A stretch of 62,507 bases of DNA, counting the filler, from Scyliorhinus canicula (taxonomy: Eukaryota), in the NCBI RefSeq assembly GCF_902713615.1. It is 6 parts of 6 records of this genome, joined end to end, with 100 filler letters (N's around TTAATTAATTAA, not from the genome) between each part and the next. Parts side by side here need not be neighbours in the genome. Positions count along the whole stretch, not along the records: positions 22,575 to 45,567 come from NW_024056011.1; 5 more parts are not named here. One strand, given 5' to 3'. Shown piece after piece: positions 23,641 through 45,250 of the stretch. The position numbers and the translations under genes were made by a program. Numbering within the stretch: the stretch's first letter is position 1; each line of letters starts with the position of its first letter. The notes below the pieces were generated by a model. The model ran no database searches. It had not been told where the DNA came from and saw only the letters and a list, made by a program, of their open reading frames with translations.

Positions 23641-23814
23641 AAATGTTGGCCTCGCCTATGGCCTTCATCTAAGAATGAATAAAAACAACACACTCTCTCT
23701 GACACAATGTTCCAATATTCCCGTTTGTAAAATAAAAATCCATTCAGTTGCAGGAATATTTATTGTTCCAGTTCTGACTTATATTGTGAAAAATAAAATT
23801 ACACCAGCAATAAA

Positions 23815-24261
23815 GTAGCTGCCCAGTGATCTACACTGCTGTCTGACTGTACACAGCCGGTGTTACTGAAAGTATTAAAGCAGCTGCCAGTGATCTACAC
23901 TGCTGTCTGACTTTACACAGCCGGTGTTACTGACAGTATTAAAGCAGCTGCCCAGTGATCTACACTGCTGTCTGACTGTACACAGCCCGTGTTACTGACA
24001 GTATTAAAGCAGCTGCCCAGTGATCTACACTGCTGTCTGACTGTACACAGCCGGTATTACTGAAAGTATTAAAGCAGCTGCCCAGTGATCTACACTGCTG
24101 TCTGACTGTACACAGCCCGTGTTACTGAAAGTATTAAAGCAGCTGCCCAGTGATCTACACTGCGGTCTGACTGTACACAGCCGGTGTTACTGACAGTATT
24201 ACAGCAGCTGCCCAGTGATCTACACTGCAGCCTGACTGTACACAGCCGGTGTTACTGAAAG
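23815..24261. repeat. 65-bp tandem repeat, ~7 copies
   Basis: Unit gcagctgcccagtgatctacactgctgtctgactgtacacagccggtgttactgaaagtattaaa. Confidence 0.95.
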
Positions 24262-26807: not shown

Positions 26808-28142
26808 GATTGTGACGTACACAGCTCAGTTAGGTGGATTGTGACGTACATAGCTCAGTTAGCTGGATTGTGACGTACACAGGTCAGTTAGCTGGATTGT
26901 GACGTACACAGCTCAGTTAGCTGAATTTTGACGAACACAGGTCAGTTAGCTGGATTGTGACGTACACAGCTCAGTCAGCTGGAATGTGACGTACCCAGCT
27001 CAGTTAGCTGGATTGTGACGTACACAGCTCAGTTAGCTGGATTGTGACGTACACAGCTCAGTTAGCTGGATTGTGACGTACACAGCTCCGTTAGCTGGAT
27101 TGTGACGGACACAGCTCAGTTAGCTGGATTGTGACGTACACAGCTCCGTTAGCTAGATTGTGACGTACACAGCTCAGTCAGCTGGATTGTGACGTACTCA
27201 GCTCAGTTAGCTGGATTGTGACGTACACAGCTCAGTTAGATGAATTTTGACGAACACAGGTCAGTTAGCTGGATTGTGACGTACACAGCTCAGTCAGCTG
27301 GAATGTGACGTACCCAGCTCAGTTAGCTGGATTGTGACGTACACAGCTCAGTTAGCTGGATTGAGACGTACACAGCTCAGTTAGCCGGATTGAGACGTAC
27401 ACAGCTCAGTTCGCTGGATTGTGACGTACATAGCTCAGTTAGCTGGATTGTGACGTAGACAGCTCCGTTAGCTGGATTGTGACGTACACAGCTCAGTTAG
27501 CTGGATTGTGACGTACACAGCTCCTTTAGCTGGATTGTGACGGACACAGCTCAGTTAGCTGGATTGTGACGTACACAGCTCCGTTAGCTAGATGGTGACG
27601 TACACGGCTCAGTCAGCTGGATTGTGACGTACTCAGCTCAGTTAGCTGGATTGTGACGTACACAGCTCAGTTAGCTGGATTGAGACGTACACAGCTCAGT
27701 CAGCTGGATTGTGACGTACACAGCTCAGTCAGCTGGATTGTTACGTACACAGCTCAGTTAGTTCGACTGTCATGTACACAGCTCAGTTAGCTGCATTGTG
27801 ACATTTACAGCGTTGTTAGCTGGATTGCGACGTACACAGCTCAGTTAGCTGGATTGTGGCGTACGTAGCTCAGTTAGCTGGATTGTGACGTGCACTGCTC
27901 AATTAGCTGGATTGAGACGTACACAGCTCAGTTGGTTGGATTGTGACGTACACAGCTCAGTCAGCTGGATTGTGACGTACACAGCTCAGTTCGTTCGACT
28001 GTCATGTACACAGCTCAGTTAGCTGCAATGTGACCTACACAGCTCAGTTAGCTGGATTGTGGCGTACACAGCTCAGTTAGCTGGATTGTGACGTACACAG
28101 CTCAGTTGGCTGGATTGTGACGTACACAGCTCAGTTAGCTGG
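26808..28142 (+). repeat. 29-bp AGCT-rich tandem array (~46 units)
   Basis: Unit gattgtgacgtacacagctcagttagctg. 1335 bp / 29 gives ~46 units. Confidence 0.97.
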
Positions 28143-28335
28143 ACGGCTGGTTCGTGATGAAGAGCGATCTCAACAGCGTGGGTTCAATTGCTGCACCGGC
28201 TGAGGTTATTAATGAAGACCCCATTCTCAACCTTGCCCCTGGCCTGAGTTATGGTGACCCTCAGGTTAAATCACCACCAGTCAGCTCTCAAAAGGAGAGA
28301 GCAATCTCCGGGACTATGGTGGGGTTTACATTTTA
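28128..28335 (+). mobile_element. tRNA-derived SINE whose head merges with the last 29-bp unit
   Basis: gctcagttagctggacggctggttcgtgatg...gggttcaattgctgcaccggctgagg... with A-box- and B-box-like motifs. Confidence 0.75.
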
Positions 28336-28656
28336 GAGAATACGATGACTGAAATAATGCGAAAAATCATCCGCTCTTCACTTTCAATCCAATGAAATTT
28401 ACACCATTCAGATTACATCAAAATGCTGTTTTTTGCCAGGTGATATGGACGGAGAAAAATATGTAAGTTTCTAATGAGGGGGCAAACAGGCGGTGGTTGT
28501 CAAATGATAGAACTAATAGAAGCTGAAATGTGGATAGAGCATTTATTCGGAAAATGTTGTAATAAACGCATAGTTCTCGTCAAATTTTGAAATGTTTGGT
28601 TACTGAATAAATACAATCCCAGAGTCTAACTTGTTGAATGGGCCATTCTCTCCCAG

Positions 28657-28953
28657 CGACACCGTCTCCGCCCACTCTCTACAGCCTGGTCTCCTGTCAG
28701 CAACGCAACACCGACGGCTCCGTGACCTACGGCTGTTTAGCGATGGACTACTCCCCAGAAATCACCAGCGTTACCTGGAAGAAGGATGGGCAGCCGATCA
28801 CCACTGGAGTTAAGAAATACCCGTCAGTGAGAAACAAGAAGGGAACCTACACCCTGAGCAGCCAGTTAACCATCACCGAGTCGGAGGGGGGATGCAGCAA
28901 AATCAGCTGTGAGGTTCGAAACAGCGGCTCAGACAAGAGCATTGAAATGACAT
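28657..28953 (+). CDS. IGHM: IgM heavy chain CH1 exon
   Basis: CAG acceptor and GTAAGT donor; 297 nt. [16 protein letters not shown]...[19 protein letters not shown]...[11 protein letters not shown]...SCEVR is typical shark Cmu1. Confidence 0.95.
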
Positions 28954-29162
28954 GTAAGTGTTGTAGAAACTGTGAGAAATAAGAAACCTGTGATTACCTT
29001 ATATAGAGTCTTGGATATAACTCATTTGTAATTCTCTGCATAGTCCTGATCCATGGGAAATCCTGCTTCGTGTCCATTGGCCACAAATGTGAAAGTATAT
29101 GAACTAATTTTGATTGTTATCAATTTATTCTGTAATAAATGTCTAACTTGTGTTTTCTGAAG

Positions 29163-29474
29163 GTCCTCTACCTGACATCCATCCAAATGTTCTCCTCACC
29201 GTGAGTTCTAATGAAGAAATCTCAAGCAAGAAATTTGCAACCATGGTCTGTTCAATTAACGATTTCCGCCCAAAGTCAATGACGGTGAAGTGGCTGAAGA
29301 ATGGACAAGCCATGGCTTCAGGTATTGTCACCTCTCCCGCCTGTGAAGTGAACGGGAACTTCTCGGCGAGCAGTCGGCTGACAGTCTCCGCTGGGGAATG
29401 GTTCAGCAGAGCGGTCTATACCTGCCAGGTCACTCATCAAGAGGTCACCCAAAGTCACAACATCACCGCGTCTG
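29163..29474 (+). CDS. IGHM: IgM heavy chain CH2 exon
   Basis: AG acceptor and GTAAGG donor; 312 nt in phase. PNVLLTVSS...[21 protein letters not shown]...YTCQVTH. Confidence 0.95.
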
Positions 29475-30113
29475 GTAAGGGACACAAACAGAGGAAACAA
29501 TAAATCATCCTGCACTCTGCTGTTAATCCAAATCAGGAATTTACTGAAGGTAGCACAAAGCACAGAATAACTTCTAATTTACTGCCATGTAGTTTGTGTT
29601 TCATTCTCATGTAAGAGATGCATTTGGATTACTCACCATTCAGGATTTGATCAGTATAGAAATAAATGTTTCCCTCTCACCTGAAGTAATTTAGGGAGTG
29701 AGGTGGATTTGATATCAGCTTTACCATGAGACAGCTGATTAAATTGCAGAGGCAATAGCTGTCTGGAACCCTTTACTGAAACCAGCTCGGGACGAAGATT
29801 TTGGAAAGTTCATTCAAGATATTTATCAAGCAGCCTTCCATATTAGGATTCTGAGATCAGGACTGGAATATTTGTATTGGGAATGCTGCAATACTGATTC
29901 ATTAGAATGGTTTCGAGGCTGACTGTATTTCACAATGAAAATAGTTTTCACAAACCAAACTAGTTTTCCATTGTGTATAGAAGATTTAAAGGCGATTATT
30001 AGAGGTTCTTATTCCGAGGTTGCTTTATTCCCATTTAGTGAGTGAAGGCTGAATCCTGCTGTCCTGATTCTGAAGATGAAACTTGGGTTGATTTCCATGT
30101 TTTTCATTCACAG

Positions 30114-30422
30114 ATACTTCCGGTTGCACTGCCGCATCAGTAACAATACTGCCACCGCCAATAGAACAGGTCTTACTGGAGGCGACTGTAACCTTAACCT
30201 GCGTCATTTCAAATGCTCCTTATGGAGTCAACGTGTCCTGGAGTGAAGCGAAGAAGCCGCTGAAATCAGAGATTGCCGACCAGCCTGGGGCAGATACTGA
30301 GAGCGTGGTCAGCAAATTAAACATCTCGACACAAGCCTGGCTGAGTGGGGCTGTGTTTGACTGTATGGCGAGCCATCAGGACCTGCCAACTCCTTTAAGA
30401 ATTTCAATCCACAAAAAAATAG
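30114..30422 (+). CDS. IGHM: IgM heavy chain CH3 exon
   Basis: CAG acceptor and GTGAG donor; 309 nt in phase. [22 protein letters not shown]...VNVSW...[13 protein letters not shown]. Confidence 0.95.
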
Positions 30423-30639
30423 GTGAGCGGTGAGACTGAAGCAATAATTGAGCCATTGTGCCTATTTCCAGTGTCAGTGCAGCGGTCAGTATTTAGTATT
30501 CAGTGTATTTATGGTCTATTCTGATTGGTAATTCCACTAACTAAATACTCTGGGCGTTTAGAGTTTAAGTGGGGAATTGATATGCAGATGAATGAACAAT
30601 GAATTGAAAACAGCGATATTGGGTTTAGATGGAGCGAGA

Positions 30640-31941: not shown

Positions 31942-32333
31942 ATCCCAATCCGCGGGAACCGTCCGTCTCTGTCCTCCTGCCCTCGGCTGAAGACGTCTCC
32001 GCTCAGAGATTCGTCTCCCTCAGCTGCCTAGTGAGAGGTTTCTCCCCCCGAGAGATCTTCGTCAAGTGGACCGTCAATGACAAGCCGGTGAATCCCGGGA
32101 ACGACAAGAACACCGAGGTGATGGCGGAGAACGGCAATAGCTCCTTCTTCATGTACAGCCTGTTATCCATTGCAGCGGAGGAGTGGGCCAGCGGCGCTTC
32201 TTACTCCTGTGTGGTGGGACATGAAGCCATCCCCTTGAAGATCATCAACAGAACGGTTGACAAATCCAGCGGTAAACCCAGTTTTGTGAACATTTCCCTC
32301 GCTCTGATGGACACCGTTAATTCATGTCAATGA
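31942..32333 (+). CDS. IGHM: IgM heavy chain CH4 + secretory tail exon
   Basis: CAG acceptor; [14 protein letters not shown]...[19 protein letters not shown] with a penultimate Cys. The internal G|GTAAA donor at 32271/32272 is in phase with TM1. Confidence 0.96.
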
Positions 32334-32360: not shown

Positions 32361-32375
32361 AATAAAAATAATAAA
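32361..32375 (+). terminator. Poly(A) signals of secretory IgM
   Basis: Two AATAAA (32361-32366 and 32370-32375) lie 28-42 nt after the stop codon. Confidence 0.8.
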
Positions 32376-32769
32376 GGTTTTTTTCCTCCAATTGTGATTT
32401 AAATGTACAGCCGCCTAATTAATGGCGCTTCCACTTTGCTGATATTAGATCTGTTCAATGAGACCCGGATTTCTACAGGTCTCAGCCCCAAGTCTGATAC
32501 AACCAGTGCTCCCAGCTCAGATACACCCTGGGTTAGAGACAGAGTAAAACTAATTCATTCAAGGATTCAGCAAAATAACTTAATTGTCCTTCCTCCCGCT
32601 GAGGAGAAATCATTTCAGACAAACAAACACATCACATTTAGATCTCGGGGTTCCTGCTTCTCTGATTGTCCATCCCTTTTAAATTGATGTCGGTTTAAGT
32701 TGCTGTATCACATCTAATGGGACCTGAAATGAGGGTCACACAGAAACATGGACCAACAATCCCCAGTCA

Positions 32770-33200
32770 AAGAGAGGGGAAAGTGAAATTGTTAATGCAC
32801 TGTACCCCCACTTCCCCAACAGAGAGGGGGGGAGGGGCTTTAGTTAATCCACTGTACCCCCACTTCCCCAACAGAGAGAGAGGGAGGGGCATTAGTTAAT
32901 TCACTGTAACCCAATTCCACAACAAAGAGAGGAAGAGGGGCATTACTTCATGCACTGTACCCACACTTCCCAGGCAAAGAGAGGGTGGTTTAGTTTACAC
33001 ACGGTGCCCCCACTTCCCCAGCAAAGAGAGGGGAGGGGCATTACCTAATGCACTGTACCCCCACTTCCCCAGCAAAGAGAGTGGGAGGGGCATTAGTTAA
33101 TCCACTGTACCCCCACTTCCCCAATAGAGAGAGGGGGAGGGGCATTAGTTAATGCATTGTACCCTCACTTCCCCAACAAATAGAGCAAAGGGGCAATACT
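32770..33200 (+). repeat. ~50-55-bp tandem repeat downstream of the secretory exon (central copy)
   Basis: Unit like ttagttaatccactgtacccccacttccccaacagagagaggggaggggca. Fewer units than in the other two copies. Confidence 0.9.
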
Positions 33201-33488
33201 AACCCACTTTACCTCCACTTTCCCGACCAAAAGAGGAGGAAGGTGACGATTGAACTCTCTGTATCTCCGCCTCCAGCAGGGAGAACCCAAAGGCAATTTG
33301 CTGAGCTGACCAGAGAGAGGGCGATTATTAACTCAATATCTTCCCAGGGAGTTTGGAAGTAAACGGTTCTCTGGACTAAGAAATCAGTTACTGACATTAC
33401 AAGATGGCATTGAGCTTACTGGCTGAAGGGTTTAAAATACCATCATGATAAAGATGTTCTTAAAATATCTATTTATGCAACATAATTT

Positions 33489-35487
33489 AAAAAAAAGAGT
33501 TTGGAGCCTTCTCGGGCTACAAACTCAACATGAGCAAAAGCGAGATCTTCCCAGTACACCAGCAAGAGGGAGGGGGGGGGGGGGGGGCAGCACTAAAGGG
33601 GCTGCCGTTCAAACAAGCCCGACATAAATTGCGCTACCTGGGGATCCAAATAGCCCATGACTGGAAAGGGGTCCACAAATGGAACCTCACCAGCCTGATG
33701 GAGGAAGTAAAAAAGGACCTGCAAAGATGGAACACACTCCCACTCTCCCTCGCGGGGAGAGTCCAGACGATCAAAATGAACGTATTGCCCAGGTTCCTCT
33801 TCCTGTTTAGATCCATTCCGATCTACACCCCTAAGGCCTTCTTCAAAGCGCTGGACAAACTTATCATGGCGTTCGTATGGGGGGCGGGGGGGGGGGGGGG
33901 GTAAAAATGCTAGGATCCCAAAGAAGATCCTACAAAAAACAAAATCCGGGGGGGGCTAGCTCTCCCGAATCTACAATTCTACCACTGGGCGGCAACAGCC
34001 GAGCGAGTAAGGGGATGGATCCAGGAGCCAGAAGCCGAGTGCGTGCGTGCGGAGGAGGCCTCCTACATAGGGACCTCCCTCCGGGCCCTCGCCACGGCAG
34101 CACTCCCATCCCCACCCAAAAAACACTCCACCAGCCCAGTGGTGACAGCCACCCTCCAATTCTGGAACCAACTGCGGCAGCAATTTGGCCTGACCAAAAT
34201 GTCGGACAAGGCTCCCATCTGCAACAACCATAGGTTCACACCAGCACTGACTAACGCCACCTTCAAAAGGTGGAGGCAGGACGGGGGGGGACACTGACAG
34301 TCAGGGACCTACACACGGACGACAGGATCGCAACACTGGACGAACTGACAGAGAAATTTCGGCTAGCTGGGGGGAACGAGCTGCAGTACCTCCAGCTCAA
34401 AAACTTCCTACGAAAGGAGACAAGGACGTACCCACAACCGCCACGACAGACACTACTGGAAGACCTACTGGACGCAAGTATCCTAGAGAAAGGGAACTGT
34501 AGCGACTTGTATGACCGACTGGTAGATAGGGACAACACCGTACTGGACGCAACAAGAAGGAAATGGGAGGACGACCTGGGGATGGAGATAGGATGGGGAC
34601 TCTGGAGCGAAGCACTGCATAGGGTCAACTCCATCTCCACGTGCGCAAGGCTCAGCCTGACGCAACTAAAAGTGGTACATAGAGCCCACTTAATGAGAAA
34701 CCGTATGAGTAGGTTCTTCCCGGAGGTGGAGGACAGATGTGAATGGTGTCAAAGAGGCCCGGCCAACCACGCCCACATGTTCTGGTCTTGCCCCAGACTT
34801 GTGGAGTACTGGACAGCCTTCTTCGAGGCAATGTCCAAAGTGGTGTGGGTGAGGGTGGAGCCATGCCCGATTGTGGCGGTCTTCGTAGTTTCAGACCAGC
34901 CAGATCTATTCCTGGGGAGGAGGGCAGATGCCCTTACCTTTGCCTCCCTGATCGCCCGCCGTAGAATCCTGTTTGGCTGGCGGTCAGCAGCACCACCCAG
35001 AGCTGCAGACTGGCTGTCCGACCTCTCGGAATCTCTCCAAATGGAGAAAATCAAATTCGCCATCCGAGGGTCGGACGACGGCTTCCACAGAACGTGGGAG
35101 CCATTCATGCAATTGTTCCAGGACCTGTTTGTGGCCAACGAACAAGAGGAAGAATAGTCGGGTGGCCAAGAATCAGGGGAAAATGAATGGGAATGGGGGG
35201 AAGGTTGCCGGGGGGGGTTACGGGTTCGTTATGGGGGTTTGATGGCTAGCTAAGGCCCAAAACCAAACTGTAAATAAATGCCTATAAACATGTGCCTCAG
35301 CCACATTGGGGAATGTAAAATATGTATGCCGGCTAAAGGGGGGAGGCCACAGTTATTATTACGAAGATGCTCACCTGTAAATATATATGTTAATTTTTGC
35401 GTGTTCTTTTTTTTCTCTCTCTAACAATTTTTAATTTGTTCAATATAAAACATGAAAACTGAATAAAAAACATTTATTAAAAAAAAG
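33489..35487 (+). mobile_element. 5'-truncated L1/Tx1-type LINE with poly(A) tail and TSD
   Basis: ORF2 C-terminal motifs RYLGIQI, LPLSLAGRV..IKMNVLPRFLFLF and CEWC..GPANHAHMFWSC. AATAAA and an A tail are at the 3' end. The TSD is CATAATTT (33481-33488 and 35488-35495). Empty sites are seen in the homologous regions near 17060 and 60350. Confidence 0.92.
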
Positions 35488-36959
35488 CATAATTTTTTTA
35501 GCACTTTGTCCCTCTTATCCGTCTGCTGAAACTGATTCCCCATAATCTAAATCCAGATTGGTGATTGAATTCTCCCTGAGTTTTCACTGTTCTCCCCTGA
35601 GCCTCCTCCTTGTACTTTTGCATTCGGTCACCTGATGTCAGCTTGCAACTCAGACAAAACACATTTATAAGCAGAAAGTTCAACATATTCTACATCGGTA
35701 TCAATAATACTCTCAACTGGTAAAGCTACAGGCAGCTGATGCAAATATACAGACAAACAGACACAGCCACTACACACACATGCACACAGACCCACAAACA
35801 CACACACGCTCACACGTAGACACAAACACACACATGGACACACACATAGAAACACATGCATAAACATACACCCAGGCACAACGAACCACACATATTTTGA
35901 CACAAAACACACGCAAACGTGCGCAAAAATTCACAAACATGCACATAAACACAAACAAACCCACATTTATACAGAGACAGACACACGTGCACATCCACAC
36001 ATACACACACTAATCCACACACACAAGCGGCTACACAAATGTACACAAACAGACATATACAACCACATGTCCACACACATACACAAACATATAAAACCAG
36101 ACAAGCAGGCTGACAGAAGAATATTAAACACAAATGTAACCAATAACATGTACATTAGCAGAATTTCACGATGACAGAAATATTTCCATTCAGAGACAAT
36201 AATCCACATTAACACACTAATGGGCTCGCGCAGACACATATTAGCCAACTTGTAAACACGCTAACACGAACACATATGAATACACATAGAGTCATCAATA
36301 CACATCAATAGATAGTTATAAGCAACCACCAACGCATAAATAGCACTGCTGCCTCTCAGCACCATAAACCCGGGTTCAATTCCAGACTTGGGTGACTGTG
36401 TGGTGTTCCCACGTTCTCCAGTGTCTGTTCCTGTTTCCTCCGAGTCTCCGGTTTCCTCCCACAGTCCAAAGATGTGCAGGTTCGGTGGGTTGGCCACGCT
36501 ATATTACCCCTTAATGACCACAACGTTAGGTGGGGTTACCAGGTTCTGGGGACAGGGCAGGGGCATGCGTCCAGGTAGGGTGCTCTTTCGGAGGGTCGGT
36601 GCAGACTCAATAGGCCGAATAGCCTCGTTCGGCACAGTCGGGATTATCCGATGATGATTCTATGATGAATTACACGCATCAACAAACACATACACACACA
36701 AAGGTACTTATTCAGACACAAACATTAAGACACTGACATGCATGTTGAACGTATAAAGACACATTAACACTTTTATTACTGGGCAGGGAAGAATAAACTT
36801 ATATTAACACAGACATTAATATATAAACATAGACTTCAACACACAAACACACACAATAAAACACTCATATATACACATTAACTTAAGATAAATTTACACA
36901 CAGGCGCTGACACACAAATCAATACTCATTGACACATGAACACACAATGACACTTATTT

Positions 36960-37180
36960 TTTTTTAAATTTAGGGTAGCCAATTATTTTTTCCAATTAAG
37001 GGGCAATTTAGCATGGCCAATCCACCTAACCTGCACGTCTTTGGGGTGTGGGGGTGAAACCCACGCAGACACGGGGAGAACGTGCAGACTCCACACGGAC
37101 AGTGACCCAGAGCCGGGATTCGATCTCGGGTCCTCAGCCGTAGGCAGCAATGCTAACCACTGTGCCACCGTGCTGCCCTA
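36960..37180 (-). mobile_element. Shark tRNA-derived SINE (representative of many copies, e.g. ~21840, 36340, 37290, 39350, 41700, 42720, 43900, 58920, 61490, 62130)
   Basis: Shared core (ccaattaaggggcaatttagcatggccaatccacctaacctgcacgtctttggg...gacagtgaccc) with tRNA-like A/B boxes in the head. Confidence 0.85.
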
Positions 37181-37622
37181 CAATGACACTTATAAAGACA
37201 TCGGGACACACAAATGAAGAGTAAAGAAACACGAATTTCGCATCTACACAGACACAAAAGCTAAAGAACAAACACAAACGTCAGGCAAGGGCGGCATGGT
37301 GACGCAATGGTTAGCACTGCTGCCTCACGATCCCGCTCCTGGGTCTGTGTCCCTGTGGACTTTCCCCGTGACCCGTGGGTCTCACCTCCGACAACCCAAT
37401 GATGTGCAGGCTAGGTGGATTGGCCAGGCTAACTTGCCCCTTAATTGGAAGAAAAAAGTTACTGAGATCGATTTCTGAGTGTCATGAACTCAACAGTAGA
37501 TATGCAATGACAAATATATTAAAGAATGAATTAGCAGCGGGAGAAAATGAAACGAGAATATTAAAAACAAAACGTGTATTAACTAACAATCTGATTATAT
37601 TTATTTGGCTCTATCCTCGTAG

Positions 37623-37750
37623 ATTCCACAGACCACACCTGGACTGAAGACAATGAGGATGATAACGGGAACATCTGGACAACCGCTTCCACATTCATCA
37701 CCCTGTTCTTCCTGAGCATTTCCTACAGCGCTGCAGTCACTCTGGTGAAG
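37623..37750 (+). CDS. IGHM: IgM transmembrane exon TM1
   Basis: TAG acceptor and GTGAGA donor. (D)STDHTWTEDNEDDNGNIWTTASTFITLFFLSISYSAAVTLVK contains the conserved antigen-receptor TM motif. Confidence 0.95.
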
Positions 37751-37890
37751 GTGAGAAGATTCAATCCACTCACACTTCAAACTGACAGAAGGCGTTTAAA
37801 ACATCTCTAAATGTTTGATTGATTAAAAACTCTAACATCAATGTCCCAAATCATAAATATCTGCTTCATTATTTTCTCTCTCTTTTACAG

Positions 37891-37899
37891 ATCAAGTGA
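37891..37899 (+). CDS. IGHM: IgM TM2 exon (IK-stop)
   Basis: Strong pyrimidine tract + CAG, then ATC AAG TGA. This gives a KIK cytoplasmic tail. Confidence 0.85.
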   Translation: MK

Positions 37900-38136
37900 T
37901 CGGTTGACGTTCGGATGCTGTAGATTTTCCTCAGCTGTTTATTATGATCTGTGTGTGACAGAAATACAATATCTCCTCTTGGTGACTCTAACAGTAAAAT
38001 TCTCTCAGTTTATTATTCTGCATCTGTAACTGAGACAATCATGGACAGTATTTCTGCTTTTCAGTTTAAAATGTACCAGATAATTTTGGCTGTAATGTAA
38101 TTGTAGTTAATAATTTCTCTCAATGTCATGTCTAAA

Positions 38137-38351
38137 TAAGAAGTCTTACAACACCAGGTTAAAGTCCAACAGGTTTGTTTCAAACACGAGCTTTCGGAGC
38201 ACGGCTCCTTCTTCAGGTGAATCTTCAGGATTCACCTGAAGAAGGAGCCGTGCTCCGAAAGCTCGTGTTTGAAACAAACCTGTTGGACTTTAACCTGGTG
38301 TTGTAAGACTTCTTACTGTGCTCACCCCAGTCCAACGCCGGCATCTCCACA
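38137..38351. mobile_element. Penelope-like inverted pseudo-LTR remnant (87-bp arm palindrome)
   Basis: Arms 38137-38223 and 38229-38315 are reverse complements around a 5-nt loop. A 15-bp direct repeat TCATGTCTAAATAAG flanks the element (38126-38140 and 38352-38366). Confidence 0.8.
38233..38267 (+). ncRNA. Minimal type I hammerhead ribozyme motif (mirror copy on - at 38185-38219)
   Basis: CAC-CTGAAGA-A-GGAGC/CGT/GCTCC-GAAA-GCTC-GTG: catalytic core, 5-bp stem II, palindromic AGCT stem III and 3-bp stem I (CAC/GTG). The predicted cut is after C38264. Confidence 0.65.
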
Positions 38352-38534
38352 TCATGTCTAAATAAGTAACTTACCTCGGATCTTATTCACAACTCTTGCC
38401 TTCCCTTTATGTTGAGTTCCTGTTGTCTCTTTCTTGTGCCTGTTACAGTTGTACATACATTTGGCAGCTCAGAGGGCATGCGTTCTGTTCTCAGTGTGAC
38501 CCTCAATCGTTATGTTCCCTTTTGTAAACATCAA

Positions 38535-38540
38535 AATAAA
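38535..38540 (+). terminator. Candidate poly(A) signal of membrane IgM
   Basis: First AATAAA found after the TM2 stop, followed by GT/T-rich sequence. Confidence 0.55.
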
Positions 38541-38979
38541 CCTTTGTGTCATATTTTTTCTGAAATTTTAATAAATACTGAATGAAAAATGAAGAAAATA
38601 AGACTAATCTGAACTCCTTTCGCTAAGGTCCATCGGCACTGATCCATTTCTCCGATTATACAGTTGTCTCCCCTTTCCCAGACAGATATTTCTCACCAGA
38701 CCTGGCTGGGATGTGTCTGAACTCAGTGAAAGAGCGACTGCGCCACCAAGCGGCCCATCCGGGTTAAGACACCTTCACCTTTGACCTTTTACGGTAAACA
38801 CCAGAGAGAGAATGGTTGCACAGCTGAAGAATTCCACTGATTCACTCCCCTCTGATGGAAGAAATGTCTCCTCACCTCTGTCCTAAATTTGAACCCCTTC
38901 CTCTGAGATTATGCCTCTGGCCCTAGACTCTCCCACAAGAGGAAACAAGATGATTTTTCAGGCTGTGTACATGGTTAAA

Positions 38980-39250
38980 GCTCTTTCCACAGTCAGTTCA
39001 CTGGAACACTCCCACTCAGACGTGTGTGTGTCTCGGGGCGTTTCCCGTCACACTGATGTTTGAAATCTCTTCCCACAGTCAGAACAGACAAACACATTGA
39101 CAGTTTGTGATATTTAGATCCTAATGAATTGAGTGACTGTCAGATCTTGATGTTATATTTGATTCGAGTTTCCCAGCTGCCAATCCTCACGTTCTAATGC
39201 CTGAAAAAGAAGTTTACAAAAATGATCACTATAAGAACAGGGTAGAAATT
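38980..39250 (-). pseudogene. C2H2 zinc-finger gene remnant
   Basis: The minus frame CSDCGKRFQTSV* is followed by frameshifted finger sequence. Confidence 0.55.
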
Positions 39251-40269
39251 CACAACAGATCATTCTAGTTTCTATCGAACCTTCTTTCCTCTCTTGCTTT
39301 TCCCAAGCATGTGGTCCAGTCAAAATAAATGACCAAAATTAGCAAGTCCCAACAAAAGTGTCACTGCCTGTGCGGAGTCTGCCTGTTCCCACCCTGTCTG
39401 CATGGGTTTCCTCCGGGTGCTCCGGCTTCCTCCCACAGTCCAAAGATGTGCAGGTTAGGTGGATTGGCCATGTTAAATTGACCTTACGTTAGATGGGGTT
39501 GCAGGATTACAGGGATAGGGTGGAGGTGTAGTCTTAAGTAGGGTGCTATTTCCAAGAGCTGGTACAGACTCGATGGTCCAATTGGCCTCCTTCTGCACTG
39601 TAAATTCTATGATTGTATCTCTATGTATTGAACAATCCAGGGAGGTAGGAGAGAGGCAGGGAAAGGAGAGCCGGAAAGAAGGTGCGGGATGCAATAATGA
39701 ACATGGTATCTCCAGGAGTAGGGAACGAGGAGAATAAAGACGAAAGACAGGAGCAACGGCAGAAGCGGAGGTGAGCGCAAGACGGCAGCGAGATCCGTCC
39801 GGGAGAAGCAAGCGACAACACCAACACCAAACCCATTCGAGTATTGCCCACTGTAATTGTTTCTCCGGCACCCGAATGTATATTTACCTCCCCAATCTCT
39901 CCCCCCTCCCCTCCCCCCCCCCACCCCACGCCCGCCCGCCCGCAAACAGTCGCTTACTTATGTGTTGTAAATAATTTTGCCAGGTGTACCAAGTTGCTGC
40001 TGTTGAGCTGGTGCACAATACCCTACCAGTTATTCTATTTTATTTTTTATTGTATTTTTAAAAAATATTCACTATTTTCTTTTCTTTGGTATGTTGGGGT
40101 GTGTCCTTCTCTTCTATACATGTGTGTGTGTGTGTATATATATATATATGTTTCTTATCCTGTGTACATAACGGTAAATATACTTTGTTCAAAAACCCAA
40201 CAAAAAACATTTACCAAAAAAAATGTATTGAACAATCAGCGAGTCAGCCTGAAATCTGCCTCACAATGC

Positions 40270-40660: not shown

Positions 40661-42213
40661 GTTAGGCAGATGTTTCACTGAGTGGGAGGGGCTTGTTCCC
40701 CATTGTTCAGAATGGAGACAACTTGTCCATCAAACTGGATTAGTCTTTCAGTCCCAATGTCTTATTGATGATGCAAAGCGGTGGCAGAGATGGAAAGAAA
40801 AGGAAGCCAATCCTGCTCTCCAGATTTCGCTGTCTCATTGTCCATCCTGCCCAATGTGTCCAAAGCTCTGTGGCCCTGTTCAGCCACATGAAGACCCAGG
40901 GCAGAAACTCACAACCCTAAGTCAGCATGACCCTCAAATCAGGGGACTGCTGATGACGAGGGTCAGCGGGGCGGGGGGCGAGGCGGCATGAGTGGTAATC
41001 CTGGACCAAGGAGCAGGAAGAGAGGTCATTGTGAATTTCTATACTGAACTGACTAATTGATTTTGGAAACTCCTTTTATAGGGGATTAGTCGGGGAGGAT
41101 TTACACACAGCAAACTCAAACCAGGAGACATGTTTATCTTTCCTGAATTTTATTTCTGGACTGACAGTGATGCCTTTGTAAACTTCTTTCACAGGGACTT
41201 AGAAAGGGACAGGAAACGCACAACCAATCCTCATATCAAATTCTGACAGCACTTTTCTGGTGATCAGGACCTGGAGATTATTGACCTTTCGGTGTAAGCA
41301 TTGAGTTCAAATCATTACCACACTGTGTAAATTTTCTTCCTCATATCTCCCCTGTAGATCTTGCTCACAATCTTAAATCTGTGTCCCATAATCCTTTTAC
41401 AATCTGCTATTGAACAGCTTTTCTTTATCTTTTGCTGGGTTTGCCGTTGTCATTTCCGGTGCCTGGGTCGCTGCCGGGAGGTCCGTCCGGTTTCATTCCC
41501 TTTTCCTGTTTTTGTAGCGGTTGAATGGGCTTGGACCAGTTCATTTAAGATCCAGAAAACAGTTGAAATCTCCTCCAAGAATTAATTGATGTGTATCCAT
41601 GTATGGGGGAACAATTCTTTTTACAAATGCCACATTGTCCTAGTTAGGGGCATAGCCATTCACCAGCATCACCAATGTACCCGCCAACCACCCACTGACC
41701 ACCGTGGTTATATTGCTGCCTCACGGCACCGGGATCCCAGGTTCGGGTCACTGTGTGGAGTTTGCACATTCTCCCCGTGTTTGCCTTGGTTTCGGCTCCA
41801 CAACCCAAAGATGTCCAGGGTAGGTGGATTGGCCATGCTAAATTGCCCGTCAATTGGAAAAAATGAATTGGGCACTCGAAATTCATATTTAAAAAAAACA
41901 TTAACACTGCAATGAAGTTACTGTGAAAAGCCCCTGGTCGCCACATTATAGTGCCTGTTTGGGTACACAGAGGGAGAATTCAGAATGTCCAAATGACTTA
42001 ACAGCATGTCTTTCGTGACTAGTGAGATTAAACCAGAGCACCCGGAGGAAACCCACATAGACACAGGGAGAACATGCACACTCCGCACAGACAGTGACCC
42101 AAGCCAGGAATCGCACCTGGGATCCTGAAGCTGTGAAGCAACAGTGTTACCCACTGTGCTACAGTTACTACCCCTTAAAACATTTTGCTTGGCCAACAGA
42201 AAACATTATCAAA

Positions 42214-42489: not shown

Positions 42490-43110
42490 CTAGGATAACT
42501 GAGTGAATCCCTTCCCACACTTAGAACAGGCGAATGGTCTGTCGCGGGTGTGACGGTGATGATGAATTTCCAACTCACATGGAGATCTGAATCCCTTCCC
42601 ACAGTCCCCACATTTCCATGGTTTCAGCATGCTGCTGGTGTCCTTGTCCCTCTCCAAGTTTGACGATCAGTTGAACTCAAGTGTGTGTGTATCGGGTCTT
42701 TTTTCAGTAACGCTGATCTTTTTAAAAAATAAATTTAGAGTATCCATTTTTTTTTTCCAATTAAGGGGCAATTTAGCATGTCCAATCCACCTACCCTGCA
42801 CATCTTTGGGTTGTGGGGCTGAAACGCACGCAAACACAGGGAGAATGTGCAAACTCCACACGGACAGTGACCCAGGGCCGAGATCGAACCTGGGACCTCG
42901 GCACCATGAGGCAGCAGTCCCAGTCACACTGATGTTGAAAATCTTTTCTTACAGACAGAGCAGACAACATTTCTTCGTCTACATTCACAGGCTAATGATA
43001 TTCAGGTCCTGATGAATGGAGTGACTCTGTTAAATCTTGCTGTGAAGTTTGATTTGAGTTTCCATTTGTAAATTCTCCCCTTGTAATATCCTGTAAGAGG
43101 AGTTTATAAA
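42490..43110 (-). pseudogene. C2H2 zinc-finger pseudogene interrupted by a SINE (~42720-42918)
   Basis: Minus frame KPWKCGDCGKGFRSPCELEIHHHRHTRDRPFACSKCGKGFTQLS*. Confidence 0.8.
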
Positions 43111-43119
43111 AGTTTTCCT

Positions 43120-45250
43120 GTGGTAACAAATTCCACGGGCTCACCACTCTCTAGTTGAAGAAATTTCTCCTCATCTCTGTCTAAATGGTCTCCCCCGTAT
43201 CCTCAGATTGCGACCTCTGGTTCTGTACACTCCCACCATCGGGAAAATCTTTCCTGCATCTACCTTGTTAAGTCCTGTTCGAATATTATAGGTTTCTATG
43301 AGATCCCCCTCATTCTTCTGAACTCCAGCGAATACAAACCTAACTGATTCAATCTCTCATACGTCAGTCCCACCATCCCAGGAATCAGTCTGGTAAACGC
43401 TCGCTGCACTCCCTCTAGAGCAAGAACATCCTTCCTCAGATAAGGAGACCAAAATTGCACACAATATTCCAGATATGGCCTCGCCACGGCCCTGTGTAAT
43501 AATAGCAAGATATTCCTGCTCCTGTACTCGAATCCGCTCGCAATGAAGGCTAGCATACCATTTGCCTTATTTACCGCCTGCTGTAGCTGCATGCTTACCT
43601 TCAGTGACTGGTGTACGAGGATACCCAGGTCTCGTTGCACATTCCCCGCCTCTCCTAATCTATGGCCGTTCAGATAATAGTCTGCCTTCTCATTTTTGGT
43701 ACCAATGTGGATAACCTCGCATTTCTCCAAATTATACTGCATCTGCCATTCATTTGCTCACTCACTCAACTTGTCCAAATCACACTGAAGGATCTCTGCA
43801 TCCTCTTCACGGCTCACCCTCCCAAGCAACTTGTGTGATCTGTAAATTTGGAGATATTGCATTTTGTTCCCTCATCTAAGTTGTTAATATATAAGTGGCA
43901 CAGCTGCCTCATGGTGCTGAGGATCAGGGTTCAGTCATGCCTGGGTCACTGTCTGTGTGCAGTCAAGTTCTCGACTTTGCATGGGTCTCACCCCCATAAC
44001 CCCAAAGATGTGCAGTGGAGGGGAACTGGCCACGCTAAATTACCACTTCATTGCAAAAATAGAATTGGGTACTTTAAATTTGAAAAGAAAAATCATTTAT
44101 ATATCTTGTGAATATCTGGGCCCAGGCACCGATCCCTGCGGTACCCCACTAGCCACTGCCTGCCAATTTGAAAAGGATCCATTAATTCCTCCTCTTTGTT
44201 TCCTGTCTGCCAGTCAGTTTTTTATCCATCTCAAGAGACGACCCCTAATCCCATGTGCTTTCATTTTACACACTAATATCTTATGCAGGAATAAGTCGAA
44301 AGCCATCTGAAAGTCCAAATATACCACATCCACTGGCTCTCCCTCGTCAACTCTACCAGTTACACCCTTGAAGAATTCCAGTAGATTTGTCAAGCATGAT
44401 TTCCCCTTAATAAATGCATGCTGATTCTGTCCGATCCTGCCACTGGTTTCTAAGTGCTTTTCTTTAAAATCTTTGATAATGGATTCTAAAATTTGCCCCA
44501 CTGCCGATGTCAGGCTTTCTGGTCTATAATTCCCTGTTTTGTCTCGAGCTCCCTATTTAAATAGTGAGTTACATAAGCCACCCTCCAATGTTCAGGAATT
44601 GTTCCAGAGTCTATAGAATCCTGGAAGATGACCACCAATGCATCCATTATTTCTAGAACCACTTCCTTAAGTACTTTGGGACACAGATTATCAGGCCCTG
44701 GGGATTTATCAGCCTCCAATCCCATCAATTTCCCCAACACAATTTCTCGAATATTGATCTCCTTTAGTTCCTTCCTCTCACTAAATCCTGCGTTCCCCAA
44801 CATTTCTAGCATCTAATTTGTGAAGCCAGAAGCAAAGTATGTATTTATTTGCTCAGCCATTTCTTTGTCCCCTATTATACATTCCCCTGTTTCTGACTGA
44901 AAGGAACCTACATTTGTCTTCACCGATCTTTTTCTCTTCACATACCGACAGAAACTTATACAATCAGCCTAATTTCCTGTTTTGTGCCATTCCCAACATC
45001 ACCACTGCAGTTTGGGGGTCTATATAAGATGCCCACTAATGTTTTTTGCCCCTTGGTGTTTCTCAGCTCTACCCATACAGACTCCACATTGTCGGAGCTA
45101 ATATCCTTCCTCACTATTGCATTAATTTCCTCTTTAACCAGCACTGCCACTCCATTGCCTTTTCCTTTTTGTCTGTCCTTCCTAAATACTGAAGATATTC
45201 AGTTCCCACCCCTGGTCATCCTGCAGCCATGTCTCCATAATCCTGATTAT
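43120..45250 (-). mobile_element. CR1 LINE ORF2 fragment with a nested SINE (~43900-44090)
   Basis: ORFs 43296..43742, 44214..44501, 44510..44812 and 44956..45150 carry CR1 EN/RT motifs (KSPGPD, QHAFIKGKSCLTNLLEFF, PYLEYCVQFWSP). Confidence 0.9.

What the first reader, a model, noticed from the sequence alone, without database searches (positions are those of the whole stretch)
38137..38351. Hammerhead ribozyme inside an 87-bp perfect hairpin in the predicted 3' UTR of membrane IgM
Seen: the palindrome lies between the TM2 stop (37899) and the first AATAAA found (38535), and its right arm holds a sense-strand minimal hammerhead (38233-38267). Known: Penelope-like elements carry minimal hammerheads that cleave efficiently only as dimers, and a 3' UTR hammerhead lowers expression of rodent Clec2 genes. 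Inference: the membrane, but not the secretory, mRNA carries a long dsRNA stem (an ADAR/Dicer/Staufen substrate) that also masks a self-cleaving motif, a potential isoform-specific control. In cis the ribozyme is probably sequestered, so activity may be low.
Basis: partly seen in the sequence, partly recalled or inferred. Interest (0 to 1): 0.7.

Follow-up and report, generated by a model that had tools for sequence, protein, structure and literature searches.

The report
Penelope-type retroelement hairpin, IgM 3' UTR
The perfect hairpin with a hammerhead motif is real, but it is one small head-to-head insertion of a hugely abundant Penelope-type retroelement that landed in the 3' UTR of the membrane IgM mRNA. 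Nothing indicates a dedicated control device.

Summary
Arms 38137-38223 and 38229-38315 are 100% complementary, with a 5-nt spacer (fold -175 kcal/mol, z -27). Each strand carries one minimal hammerhead motif (+ strand 38233-38267).

The motif has the four hallmarks of Penelope-like-element (PLE) min-hammerheads, but only 3 bp of helix I. Rfam's hammerhead models do not detect it.

Public reads show the element is a massive interspersed repeat, with depth at least 1000-fold above its flanks in DNA and RNA runs of two organism labels. Other copies end at either of two 3' termini about 36-40 nt apart. That matches the optional PLE "tail".

Here the left arm is a tail-less copy and the right arm a tailed one. 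They lie inside an 11-15-bp target-site duplication in AT-rich DNA. This is the published PLE architecture of an inverted 5'-truncated copy with a one-sided tail.

The site does lie in the membrane-IgM 3' UTR. The TM1-TM2 splice is seen in RNA contigs, and RNA depth continues on both sides of the insertion to about 38520. The secretory mRNA ends 5.7 kb upstream.

In that UTR the motif is paired with probability above 0.99, so cleavage is unlikely. Isoform-specific regulation remains untested speculation. Verdict: an ordinary new member of a known kind.

The parts
37623..37749 (+). IgM TM1 exon (…NIWTTASTFITLFFLSISYSAAVTLVK), 5' splice site GT at 37750
   Evidence: Sequence read. Splice joint 37748->37889 (GT..AG) found in RNA contigs X9 and X13 and in one raw RNA read of X24.
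37891..37899 (+). IgM TM2 exon coding part (IK, stop TGA at 37897-37899)
37900..38555 (+). 3' UTR of the membrane IgM mRNA. The 3' end is approximate. AATAAA at 38535-38540 and 38570-38575.
   Evidence: X9 RNA-contig depth is 520-1980 over 37873-38107 and 617-942 over 38390-38483. It falls to 172 over 38484-38530 and 21 beyond. Intron depth is 23-37. Poly(A) signal scan.
38126..38140 (.). Left copy of the target-site duplication, (TCAT)GTCTAAATAAG. The first 4 nt are ambiguous with the element's own 3' end. The last 4 nt overlap the left arm.
38137..38223 (-). Left arm: an inverted, 5'-truncated, tail-less copy of the repeat. It carries the hammerhead motif on the - strand (38219-38185, cut site after 38188).
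   Evidence: Its outer end coincides with the short-form 3' terminus of the family (loose ends behind 38317/38319).
38224..38228 (.). 5-nt spacer TTCAG, the loop of the hairpin
38229..38315 (+). Right arm: a 5'-truncated copy of the repeat in sense orientation
38233..38267 (+). Minimal type I hammerhead motif: CAC / CUGAAGA / A / GGAGC-CGU-GCUCC / GAA / AGCU / C17, predicted cut after 38264 / GUG
   Evidence: Features compared with PMC4209133.
38316..38355 (+). 'Tail': a 37-40-nt C/A-rich extension present only on the right copy. It is part of the repeat family (the bin with highest read depth), not private sequence.
   Evidence: Depth 1.9 million in the 38296-38342 bin. Heterogeneous loose ends behind 38353-38356. 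The 3' end ...CACATCAT is shared with copies L001 and L002.
38352..38366 (.). Right copy of the target-site duplication, (TCAT)GTCTAAATAAG

Best explanation
The feature is a small, young retroelement insertion of about 215-220 bp plus an 11-15-bp target-site duplication. It belongs to a very abundant Penelope-like-element (PLE) type repeat family whose 3' terminal module carries a minimal, dimer-type hammerhead motif.

The insertion consists of two 5'-truncated copies head to head. The left copy ends at the family's short 3' terminus. The right copy ends at the long terminus, with the 37-40-nt 'tail'.

Inferred origin: the PLE endonuclease cut both strands of an AT-rich target with an 11-15-nt stagger. 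Each 3' end then primed reverse transcription at one of the element's two internal start sites. The two cDNAs were joined at a common inner end.

The target happened to lie in the 3' UTR used only by the membrane form of IgM mRNA. In that mRNA the two copies must form an 87-bp perfect duplex. The duplex buries the single sense hammerhead, which in any case lacks helix III, has only 3 bp of helix I and has no partner copy in the same orientation. Self-cleavage is therefore not expected.

The likeliest consequence, if any, is the generic one of a long 3'-UTR duplex: binding by dsRNA-binding proteins, editing or dicing. It would be a by-product rather than an evolved control.

Shown: the repeat structure, motif, duplication, family abundance, two alternative 3' ends and UTR location.
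Inferred: PLE mobilisation, the double-strand priming mechanism and the absence of function.
For: Structure:
- Perfect 87-nt arms and the flanking direct repeat.
- Fold z = -27.

Motif:
- It is unique in the piece and absent from 300 shuffles.

Family abundance and limits:
- Depth over 38108-38389 is 2x10^5 to 1.9x10^6, against 200-1300 in the flanks, in DNA contigs X1. The same contrast appears in X9, X13 (another organism label) and raw RNA reads X24 (100-800 against 0-4, both strands).
- Low-agreement, AT-rich loose ends mark two alternative 3' termini, at 38317-38319 and 38353-38356.
- The frequent family variants inside the motif fall at N7 (38240), loop 2 (38249) and H17 (38264). These are positions free to vary in a hammerhead.

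Independent copies:
- Two other copies (L001, L002) end at the same ...CACATCAT.

Published PLE traits:
- 5' truncation, an adjacent inverted 5'-truncated copy, and a 30-40-bp tail often at one end only (PMC8557442).
- Two RT start sites delimiting the tail, cleavage and extension of both target strands, AT-rich targets, and an RT start 85-92 nt beyond the hammerhead cut site (PMC11167929).
- Here the long end lies 91 nt beyond the predicted cut.

Location and accessibility:
- UTR location.
- Motif paired with probability above 0.997 in the UTR fold.
Against: - No PLE reverse transcriptase / GIY-YIG ORF could be linked to the family. None lies in the piece, and a search with the open 38-aa frame found only two spurious ORFs.
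- Repbase and Dfam could not be consulted.
- Why both copies stop at the same inner position is not explained by independent priming alone.
- No read or contig was shown that physically bridges flank, hairpin and flank in RNA. All runs carry paralogous or allelic clusters that differ from the window at several flank positions.
- A long perfect duplex in an abundant B-cell mRNA could well have a real effect that I cannot measure.
Confidence: 0.75

Rival explanations
1. One reading: the hairpin plus hammerhead is an isoform-specific regulator of membrane IgM mRNA. It would act through ADAR, Dicer or Staufen on the 87-bp duplex and/or through regulated self-cleavage.
For: The element is inside the membrane-specific 3' UTR and absent from the secretory mRNA. 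An 87-bp perfect duplex is a plausible substrate for dsRNA-binding proteins, as shown for inverted Alu pairs in human 3' UTRs (PMC7566578). A 3'-UTR hammerhead exists in rodent Clec2 genes (PMC6155905).
Against: It is one of a very large number of copies of a mobile repeat, with a target-site duplication. The arms are identical, as expected of a recent event rather than long maintenance. The motif lacks helix III, has 3 bp of helix I and is more than 99% paired. PLE min-HHRs cleave poorly even as dimers. No editing signal could be separated from DNA-level variation.
Confidence: 0.1
2. The repeat is a LINE-dependent SINE, or another non-PLE retroposon, that merely contains a hammerhead-like string. 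The inverted structure arose by snap-back (self-primed) second-strand synthesis.
For: No PLE ORF was linked to it. Both arms stop at the same inner position with a 5-nt loop, as self-priming would give. The family is extremely abundant and 5'-truncated, like SINE or LINE tails.
Against: There is no poly(A) or simple-repeat tail at the 3' end. The two alternative 3' ends 36-40 nt apart, and the left arm ending at the short one, are the PLE 'tail' signature. The motif has the PLE-specific extra nucleotide and palindromic helix III. Snap-back alone would copy the tail into both arms.
Confidence: 0.1
3. The perfect palindrome is an assembly or sequencing artefact (a fold-back chimera) at an ordinary single 5'-truncated copy.
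For: PLE tandem and inverted structures are known to trouble assemblies. No contig shown spans the hairpin centre.
Against: The palindrome is framed by an intact target-site duplication. Its left end falls at the family's canonical short 3' terminus, which an artefact would not produce. Opposite-strand min-HHR pairs are described for PLE-bearing genomes.
Confidence: 0.03
4. It is a miniature inverted-repeat or fold-back DNA transposon.
For: Terminal inverted repeats and a flanking direct repeat.
Against: The inverted repeats are the whole element, with a one-sided 37-40-nt extension. The duplication is 11-15 bp. Other copies in the family are single-orientation, 5'-truncated and share only the 3' end.
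Confidence: 0.02

Closest known systems
Minimal hammerhead motifs (min-HHR) of Penelope-like elements (Cervera & de la Pena 2014, PMC4209133)
   Same: Type I topology. CUGANGA and GAAA boxes. An unpaired nucleotide between A9 and G10.1. A G10.1-C11.1 pair. Helix II longer than the canonical 4 bp (5 bp here). No loop 3, with palindromic AGCU allowing a dimeric helix III. Thousands of dispersed, mostly truncated copies, some as nearby pairs on opposite strands.
   Different: Helix I of this copy is only 3 bp, against 4-5 bp in the description. The family is from a cartilaginous-fish-type genome (cluster-type IgM), which I did not find named in that paper's text. Activity is untested.
PLE insertion architecture: pseudo-LTR, inverted 5'-truncated copy, one-sided 30-40-bp tail (Craig et al. 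2021, PMC8557442; Frangieh et al. 2024, PMC11167929)
   Same: 5' truncation. An adjacent inverted copy. A 37-40-nt tail on one side only. Two alternative 3' ends in the family. An AT-rich target. The long 3' end lies 91 nt beyond the hammerhead cut site, against 85-92 nt in the anole element.
   Different: The insertion is extremely short (87 + 127 nt), with no ORF or pseudo-LTR retained. Both copies share the same inner end.
Non-LTR retrozymes of animals (Cervera & de la Pena 2020, PMC7229834; Li et al. 2026 preprint 10.64898/2026.07.22.740005)
   Same: Short non-coding hammerhead-bearing repeats related to PLE pseudo-LTRs. They are present in a chondrichthyan in the preprint.
   Different: Retrozymes are tandem arrays with canonical type I hammerheads (helix III and loop-loop contacts) and are depleted from genes. 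Here there is a single inverted pair with a min-HHR inside a UTR.
3'-UTR hammerhead of rodent Clec2 genes (cited in PMC6155905)
   Same: A hammerhead motif located in a 3' UTR.
   Different: The Clec2 ribozyme is a complete, active, discontinuous hammerhead conserved at the locus. This one is a repeat-borne minimal motif without helix III, masked by its own complement.
Inverted-repeat Alu pairs in human 3' UTRs (e.g. PMC7566578)
   Same: Two copies of a retroelement in opposite orientation within one 3' UTR form a long intramolecular duplex.
   Different: IRAlus are about 300-nt imperfect duplexes from two separate insertions. This is a perfect 87-bp duplex with a 5-nt loop made in one insertion event. 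No binding, editing or retention data exist here.

Membership tests
Hammerhead ribozyme, PLE minimal type I variant (min-HHR) | Conserved core boxes CUGANGA ... GAAA ... U-H cleavage triplet in type I order | tested here: met
   CUGAAGA at 38236-38242, GAA-A at 38257-38260, U38263-C38264.
Hammerhead ribozyme, PLE minimal type I variant (min-HHR) | Helix II closed by G10.1-C11.1, with one unpaired nucleotide between A9 and G10.1 | tested here: met
   A38243 is unpaired. GGAGC/GCUCC is 5 bp with a 3-nt loop. Criteria from PMC4209133.
Hammerhead ribozyme, PLE minimal type I variant (min-HHR) | No or minimal helix III, with palindromic 15.2-16.2 so that two copies can form it | tested here: met
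   AGCU at 38260-38263 with no loop. One family variant seen has AAUU, also palindromic.
Hammerhead ribozyme, PLE minimal type I variant (min-HHR) | Helix I of about 4-5 bp | tested here: inconclusive
   There are only 3 contiguous pairs (CAC/GUG) in this copy. The commoner family variant ...GCUAGUGAUUCC would give 7 of 8 pairs with GGAUUCAC (loose ends).
Hammerhead ribozyme, PLE minimal type I variant (min-HHR) | Self-cleavage, as a dimer | not testable with these tools
   This needs an in vitro transcription and cleavage assay. Published min-HHRs are weak even as dimers.
Hammerhead ribozyme (Rfam covariance models) | Match to an Rfam hammerhead model | tested here: not met
   There was no hammerhead hit even at E up to 10 in 37000-39500. 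Only sub-threshold generic miRNA-hairpin matches appeared, and nothing at gathering scores in the piece. This is expected for a motif without helix III.
Penelope-like element (PLE) insertion | Optional 30-40-bp tail, i.e. two alternative 3' termini | tested here: met
   Heterogeneous loose ends behind 38317-38319 and behind 38353-38356 in several runs. The left arm lacks the 37-40 nt that the right copy carries.
Penelope-like element (PLE) insertion | 5' truncation with an adjacent inverted 5'-truncated copy | tested here: met
   with the architecture described in PMC8557442.
Penelope-like element (PLE) insertion | AT-rich target with a target-site duplication, and no poly(A) or microsatellite 3' tail | tested here: met
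   The duplication is (TCAT)GTCTAAATAAG. Flanks of other copies are AT-rich. The 3' end ...CACATCAT is followed directly by unrelated sequence in three copies.
Penelope-like element (PLE) insertion | Family includes autonomous members encoding a telomerase-like RT and a GIY-YIG endonuclease | tested here: inconclusive
   There is none in the 23-kb piece. The search with the 38-aa open frame gave only 2 spurious ORFs.
Regulatory 3'-UTR ribozyme (Clec2 type) | The motif can adopt the active fold within the mRNA | tested here: not met
   The unpaired probability of 38236-38267 in the UTR fold is at most 0.003. There is no helix III and no second sense copy.
IRAlu-like 3'-UTR duplex | Inverted retroelement copies inside one 3' UTR forming a long duplex | tested here: met
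IRAlu-like 3'-UTR duplex | A-to-I editing, nuclear retention or Staufen binding | not testable with these tools
   The variants occur in the DNA contigs as well. No matched DNA and RNA of one individual was available.

The most novel reading that the evidence does not exclude
The perfect 87-bp hairpin is carried on an abundant B-cell mRNA. It could be processed into small RNAs, or sensed as dsRNA, and so act in trans on the many thousands of transcribed copies of the same PLE-type family, or on mIgM dosage. That would make this insertion a domesticated source of repeat-directed small RNAs, or a membrane-isoform-specific brake.
Probability: 0.04. Interest if true: 0.6.

Novelty: new member of a known kind. 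Interest (0 to 1): 0.22.

Why it matters
Mainly as a caution. A convincing hammerhead motif in a UTR of an immune gene is here explained by a high-copy Penelope-type repeat, so similar hits in this genome should be treated as repeats first.

Two minor points may interest specialists:
- This tiny insertion is a clean natural example of what the in vitro PLE work predicts. Both target strands are extended, one from each of the two RT start sites, giving one tailed and one tail-less end.
- It puts a perfect 87-bp duplex into the membrane-only 3' UTR of an IgM cluster. That offers a simple natural test of how a cartilaginous-fish-type B cell handles long UTR dsRNA, if clusters with and without the insertion exist.

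Tried and rejected
- Rfam at E up to 10 over 37000-39500, and at gathering scores over the whole piece, gave no hammerhead. It gave only generic hairpin matches (mir-642, 55.8 bits against a threshold of 90), which I regard as meaningless.
- blastn of the element against the piece found no other copy.
- Exact-pattern scans found nothing: two of the metagenome contigs and one of the viral contigs.
- A literature search for a 21-nt string of the element found nothing. Lunse et al. 2017 is not held. The supplement of PMC4209133 is not held.
- The frame that would start at an AUG in CUGAUGA variants is open to the element's end in this copy. A search of 1.84 billion representatives gave only two short spurious ORFs lying over other truncated copies. 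The commoner family variant has a stop there. So the idea that this is the start of a PLE ORF is not supported.
- For A-to-I editing, T>C and A>G changes are as frequent in the DNA contigs as in RNA. No inference is possible.
- No empty-site joint (38140 to 38353/38367) appeared among the 15 joints listed, but 54 were not shown. Whether other clusters lack the insertion therefore remains open.
- The bacterial promoter/terminator scan is irrelevant to this eukaryotic locus.
- The MITE, assembly-artefact and pure snap-back readings were rejected for the reasons given under rival explanations.

Full report
**1. Observation**

The window holds a perfect inverted repeat. The arms are 38137-38223 and 38229-38315, 87 nt each and 100% complementary, separated by 5 nt, TTCAG. 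As RNA, 38120-38370 folds at -174.9 kcal/mol. Dinucleotide shuffles give -56.3 +/- 4.3, so z = -27.4.

The + strand of the right arm reads, from 38233:
- CAC | CUGAAGA | A | GGAGC-CGU-GCUCC | GAA | AGCU | C | GUG

The same 32-mer lies on the - strand of the left arm, and nowhere else in the window. I wrote a descriptor with these parts: CUGANGA; 0-1 extra nucleotide; a 4-9-bp helix II; GAAA; a complementary 15.2/16.2 pair; U-H. It hit only these two places in the 23-kb piece and none in 300 dinucleotide shuffles.

**2. What kind of hammerhead**

Rfam's hammerhead models do not see it, even at E up to 10. The only matches are sub-threshold generic miRNA-hairpin hits. That is expected, because the motif has no helix III.

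It does fit the minimal hammerhead (min-HHR) that Cervera and de la Pena described in the terminal repeats of Penelope-like elements (PLEs). The features that recurred beyond their search descriptor are all present here:
- the G10.1-C11.1 pair;
- palindromic 15.2-16.2 (AGCU);
- a helix II longer than the canonical 4 bp (5 bp here).

Helix I is only 3 bp in this copy. The paper also reports pairs of min-HHRs on opposite strands, and very low activity of such motifs, with cleavage detectable only as dimers.

**3. It is a high-copy repeat**

I laid four public runs on 37450-38850. In DNA contigs (X1) the summed depth is 2x10^5 to 1.9x10^6 over 38108-38389, against 200-1300 in the flanks.

The same contrast holds elsewhere:
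- in two probable RNA contig sets, X9 and X13 (a second organism label);
- in raw oligo-dT RNA reads, X24 (100-800 against 0-4, on both strands).

The deepest bin is 38296-38342. So the stretch that continues the right arm is part of the family, not private sequence.

Loose ends with low agreement (0.35-0.5), that is, many different AT-rich flanks, pile up behind 38353-38356 and, separately, behind 38317-38319. Loose ends before 38268-38272 have high agreement and show that other copies run on upstream through the hammerhead. They carry variants such as ...GGAGCAGUGCUCCGAAAGCUAGUGAUUCC.

Within the motif, the common family variants are at 38240 (N7), 38249 (loop 2) and 38264 (H17). These are positions a hammerhead allows to vary. 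One variant replaces AGCU by AAUU, which is also palindromic.

Two further copies were recovered from host-derived metagenome contigs, L001 and L002. Both are 5'-truncated and end at the same ...CACA(U/C)CAU. This places the long 3' end at 38355.

**4. Insertion anatomy and family**

The element is framed by (TCAT)GTCTAAATAAG at 38126-38140 and 38352-38366. The first four letters are also the element's own end. The target-site duplication is therefore 11-15 bp, in AT-rich DNA.

The left arm ends where the family's short form ends. The right copy carries 37-40 nt more and ends where the long form ends.

Published PLE traits match this point for point:
- High 5' truncation, an inverted 5'-truncated copy next to the element, and a 30-40-bp tail often present at only one end (PMC8557442).
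- The tail is the sequence between two internal reverse-transcription start sites (PMC11167929).
- The anole PLE protein cuts and extends both strands of AT-rich targets (same paper).
- Reverse transcription starts 111-118 nt into the ORF, with the hammerhead cut 26 nt into it. That is 85-92 nt beyond the cut.

Here the long end lies 91 nt beyond the predicted cut after C38264. The 3' end has no poly(A) or simple repeat.

I therefore read the feature as one PLE-type integration event. Both target strands primed cDNA synthesis, one from each start site.

Two caveats apply:
- Why both cDNAs end at the same inner position is not explained. Run-off on a short template, or a template switch or snap-back step, are the options.
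- No RT / GIY-YIG ORF could be tied to the family with the tools at hand. The family could equally be a non-autonomous PLE derivative, as proposed for animal retrozymes.

**5. Gene context**

Four C1-set exons lie at 28638-28982, 29150-29503, 30233-30433 and 32031-32333. The secretory tail ends in ...MDTVNSCQ, with the stop at 32331-32333 and AATAAA at 32361 and 32370.

TM1 is 37623-37749 (...FITLFFLSISYSAAVTLVK, then gt). TM2 is 37891-37899 (IK, stop). Together these identify an IgM heavy-chain cluster.

The TM1-TM2 joint (37748 to 37889, GT..AG) is present in X9, in X13 and in one X24 read.

X9 depth along the region:

| Region | Depth |
|---|---|
| TM1 | 415-1858 |
| intron | 23-37 |
| 37873-38107 | 520-1980 |
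| 38390-38483 | 617-942 |
| 38484-38530 | 172 |
| beyond 38530 | 21 |

The membrane mRNA therefore runs past the insertion site and ends at about 38510-38560. That is near the first canonical AATAAA at 38535. Only weak variants (AGTAAA, AATAAG) lie before it. The secretory mRNA ends 5.7 kb upstream.

Three caveats apply:
- Contigs break at the repeat, so no single record was shown to bridge the flank, the hairpin and the other flank.
- All runs differ from the window at fixed flank positions (38077, 38481, 38494 and others). They therefore represent paralogous or allelic clusters.
- No empty-site joint was among the joints listed, but the list was truncated.

**6. What it does**

In the UTR fold, the 32 nt of the motif are unpaired with probability at most 0.003. 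The mRNA has only one sense copy, so there is no dimer partner. Helix III is absent and helix I is 3 bp. Self-cleavage in cis is therefore very unlikely.

What the membrane mRNA does acquire is an 87-bp perfect duplex. This is formally like inverted Alu pairs in human 3' UTRs, which bind Staufen1. Whether that changes mIgM expression is unknown. The variant spectrum in RNA is not distinguishable from that in DNA.

The identical arms and duplication fit a recent event, but the bound is loose.

**7. Verdict**

The regulatory inference is unsupported.

The thing is an ordinary, if neatly diagnostic, insertion of a known kind of retroelement module. It is a new member of a known kind, of low interest. 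Its small value is as a natural illustration of two-strand, two-start-site PLE integration, and as a possible natural test of UTR dsRNA handling.

Noticed in passing
window 36433-36638, 36957-37179, 37288-37457, 39360-39601, 41700-41898, 42017-42165, 42719-42922, 43896-44090: A second interspersed repeat family, about 200 bp and 72-86% alike, in both orientations, surrounds the TM exons. It produces recurring artefactual ORFs ending ...WIGHAKLPLNWKK. It was not classified.
   Followed up: partly
window 23805-24261; 26808-28143; 32749-33243: Three tandem arrays. The first has a period of about 65 bp at about 95% identity. The second has a period of about 29 bp at about 89% identity over 1.3 kb and ends about 500 bp before CH1. 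The third has a period of about 52 bp at 75-83% identity, just after the secretory poly(A) signals.
   Followed up: no
window 33530-35157 (+) and 43296-45150 (-): Long ORF fragments that look like LINE-type reverse-transcriptase remnants. One lies in the CH4-TM1 intron and one downstream of the gene. They were not scanned against Pfam.
   Followed up: no
window 35628-36248: A TG-rich low-complexity stretch in the CH4-TM1 intron gives overlapping Cys/Val-rich artefactual ORFs on the - strand.
   Followed up: no
window 38077, 38481, 38494, 38542-38558 and further flank positions: In all four runs laid, every contig covering these places differs from the window. The public runs therefore hold paralogous or allelic IgM clusters rather than this exact one. 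Parts of the UTR (37932-38067) are nevertheless identical, also in the second organism label.
   Followed up: partly
window 38265-38272 versus family variants: This copy reads GUGUUUG after the predicted cut site, where the common family variant reads GUGAUUCC. The common variant would pair 7 of 8 with the upstream GGAUUCAC. The window copy therefore has a weakened helix I relative to its family.
   Followed up: partly
window 32265-32275 (…CCAGCGGTAAACCC… in CH4): A GGTAAA inside CH4, upstream of the secretory tail, is the expected internal 5' splice site for joining CH4 to TM1. It was not checked in reads.
   Followed up: no
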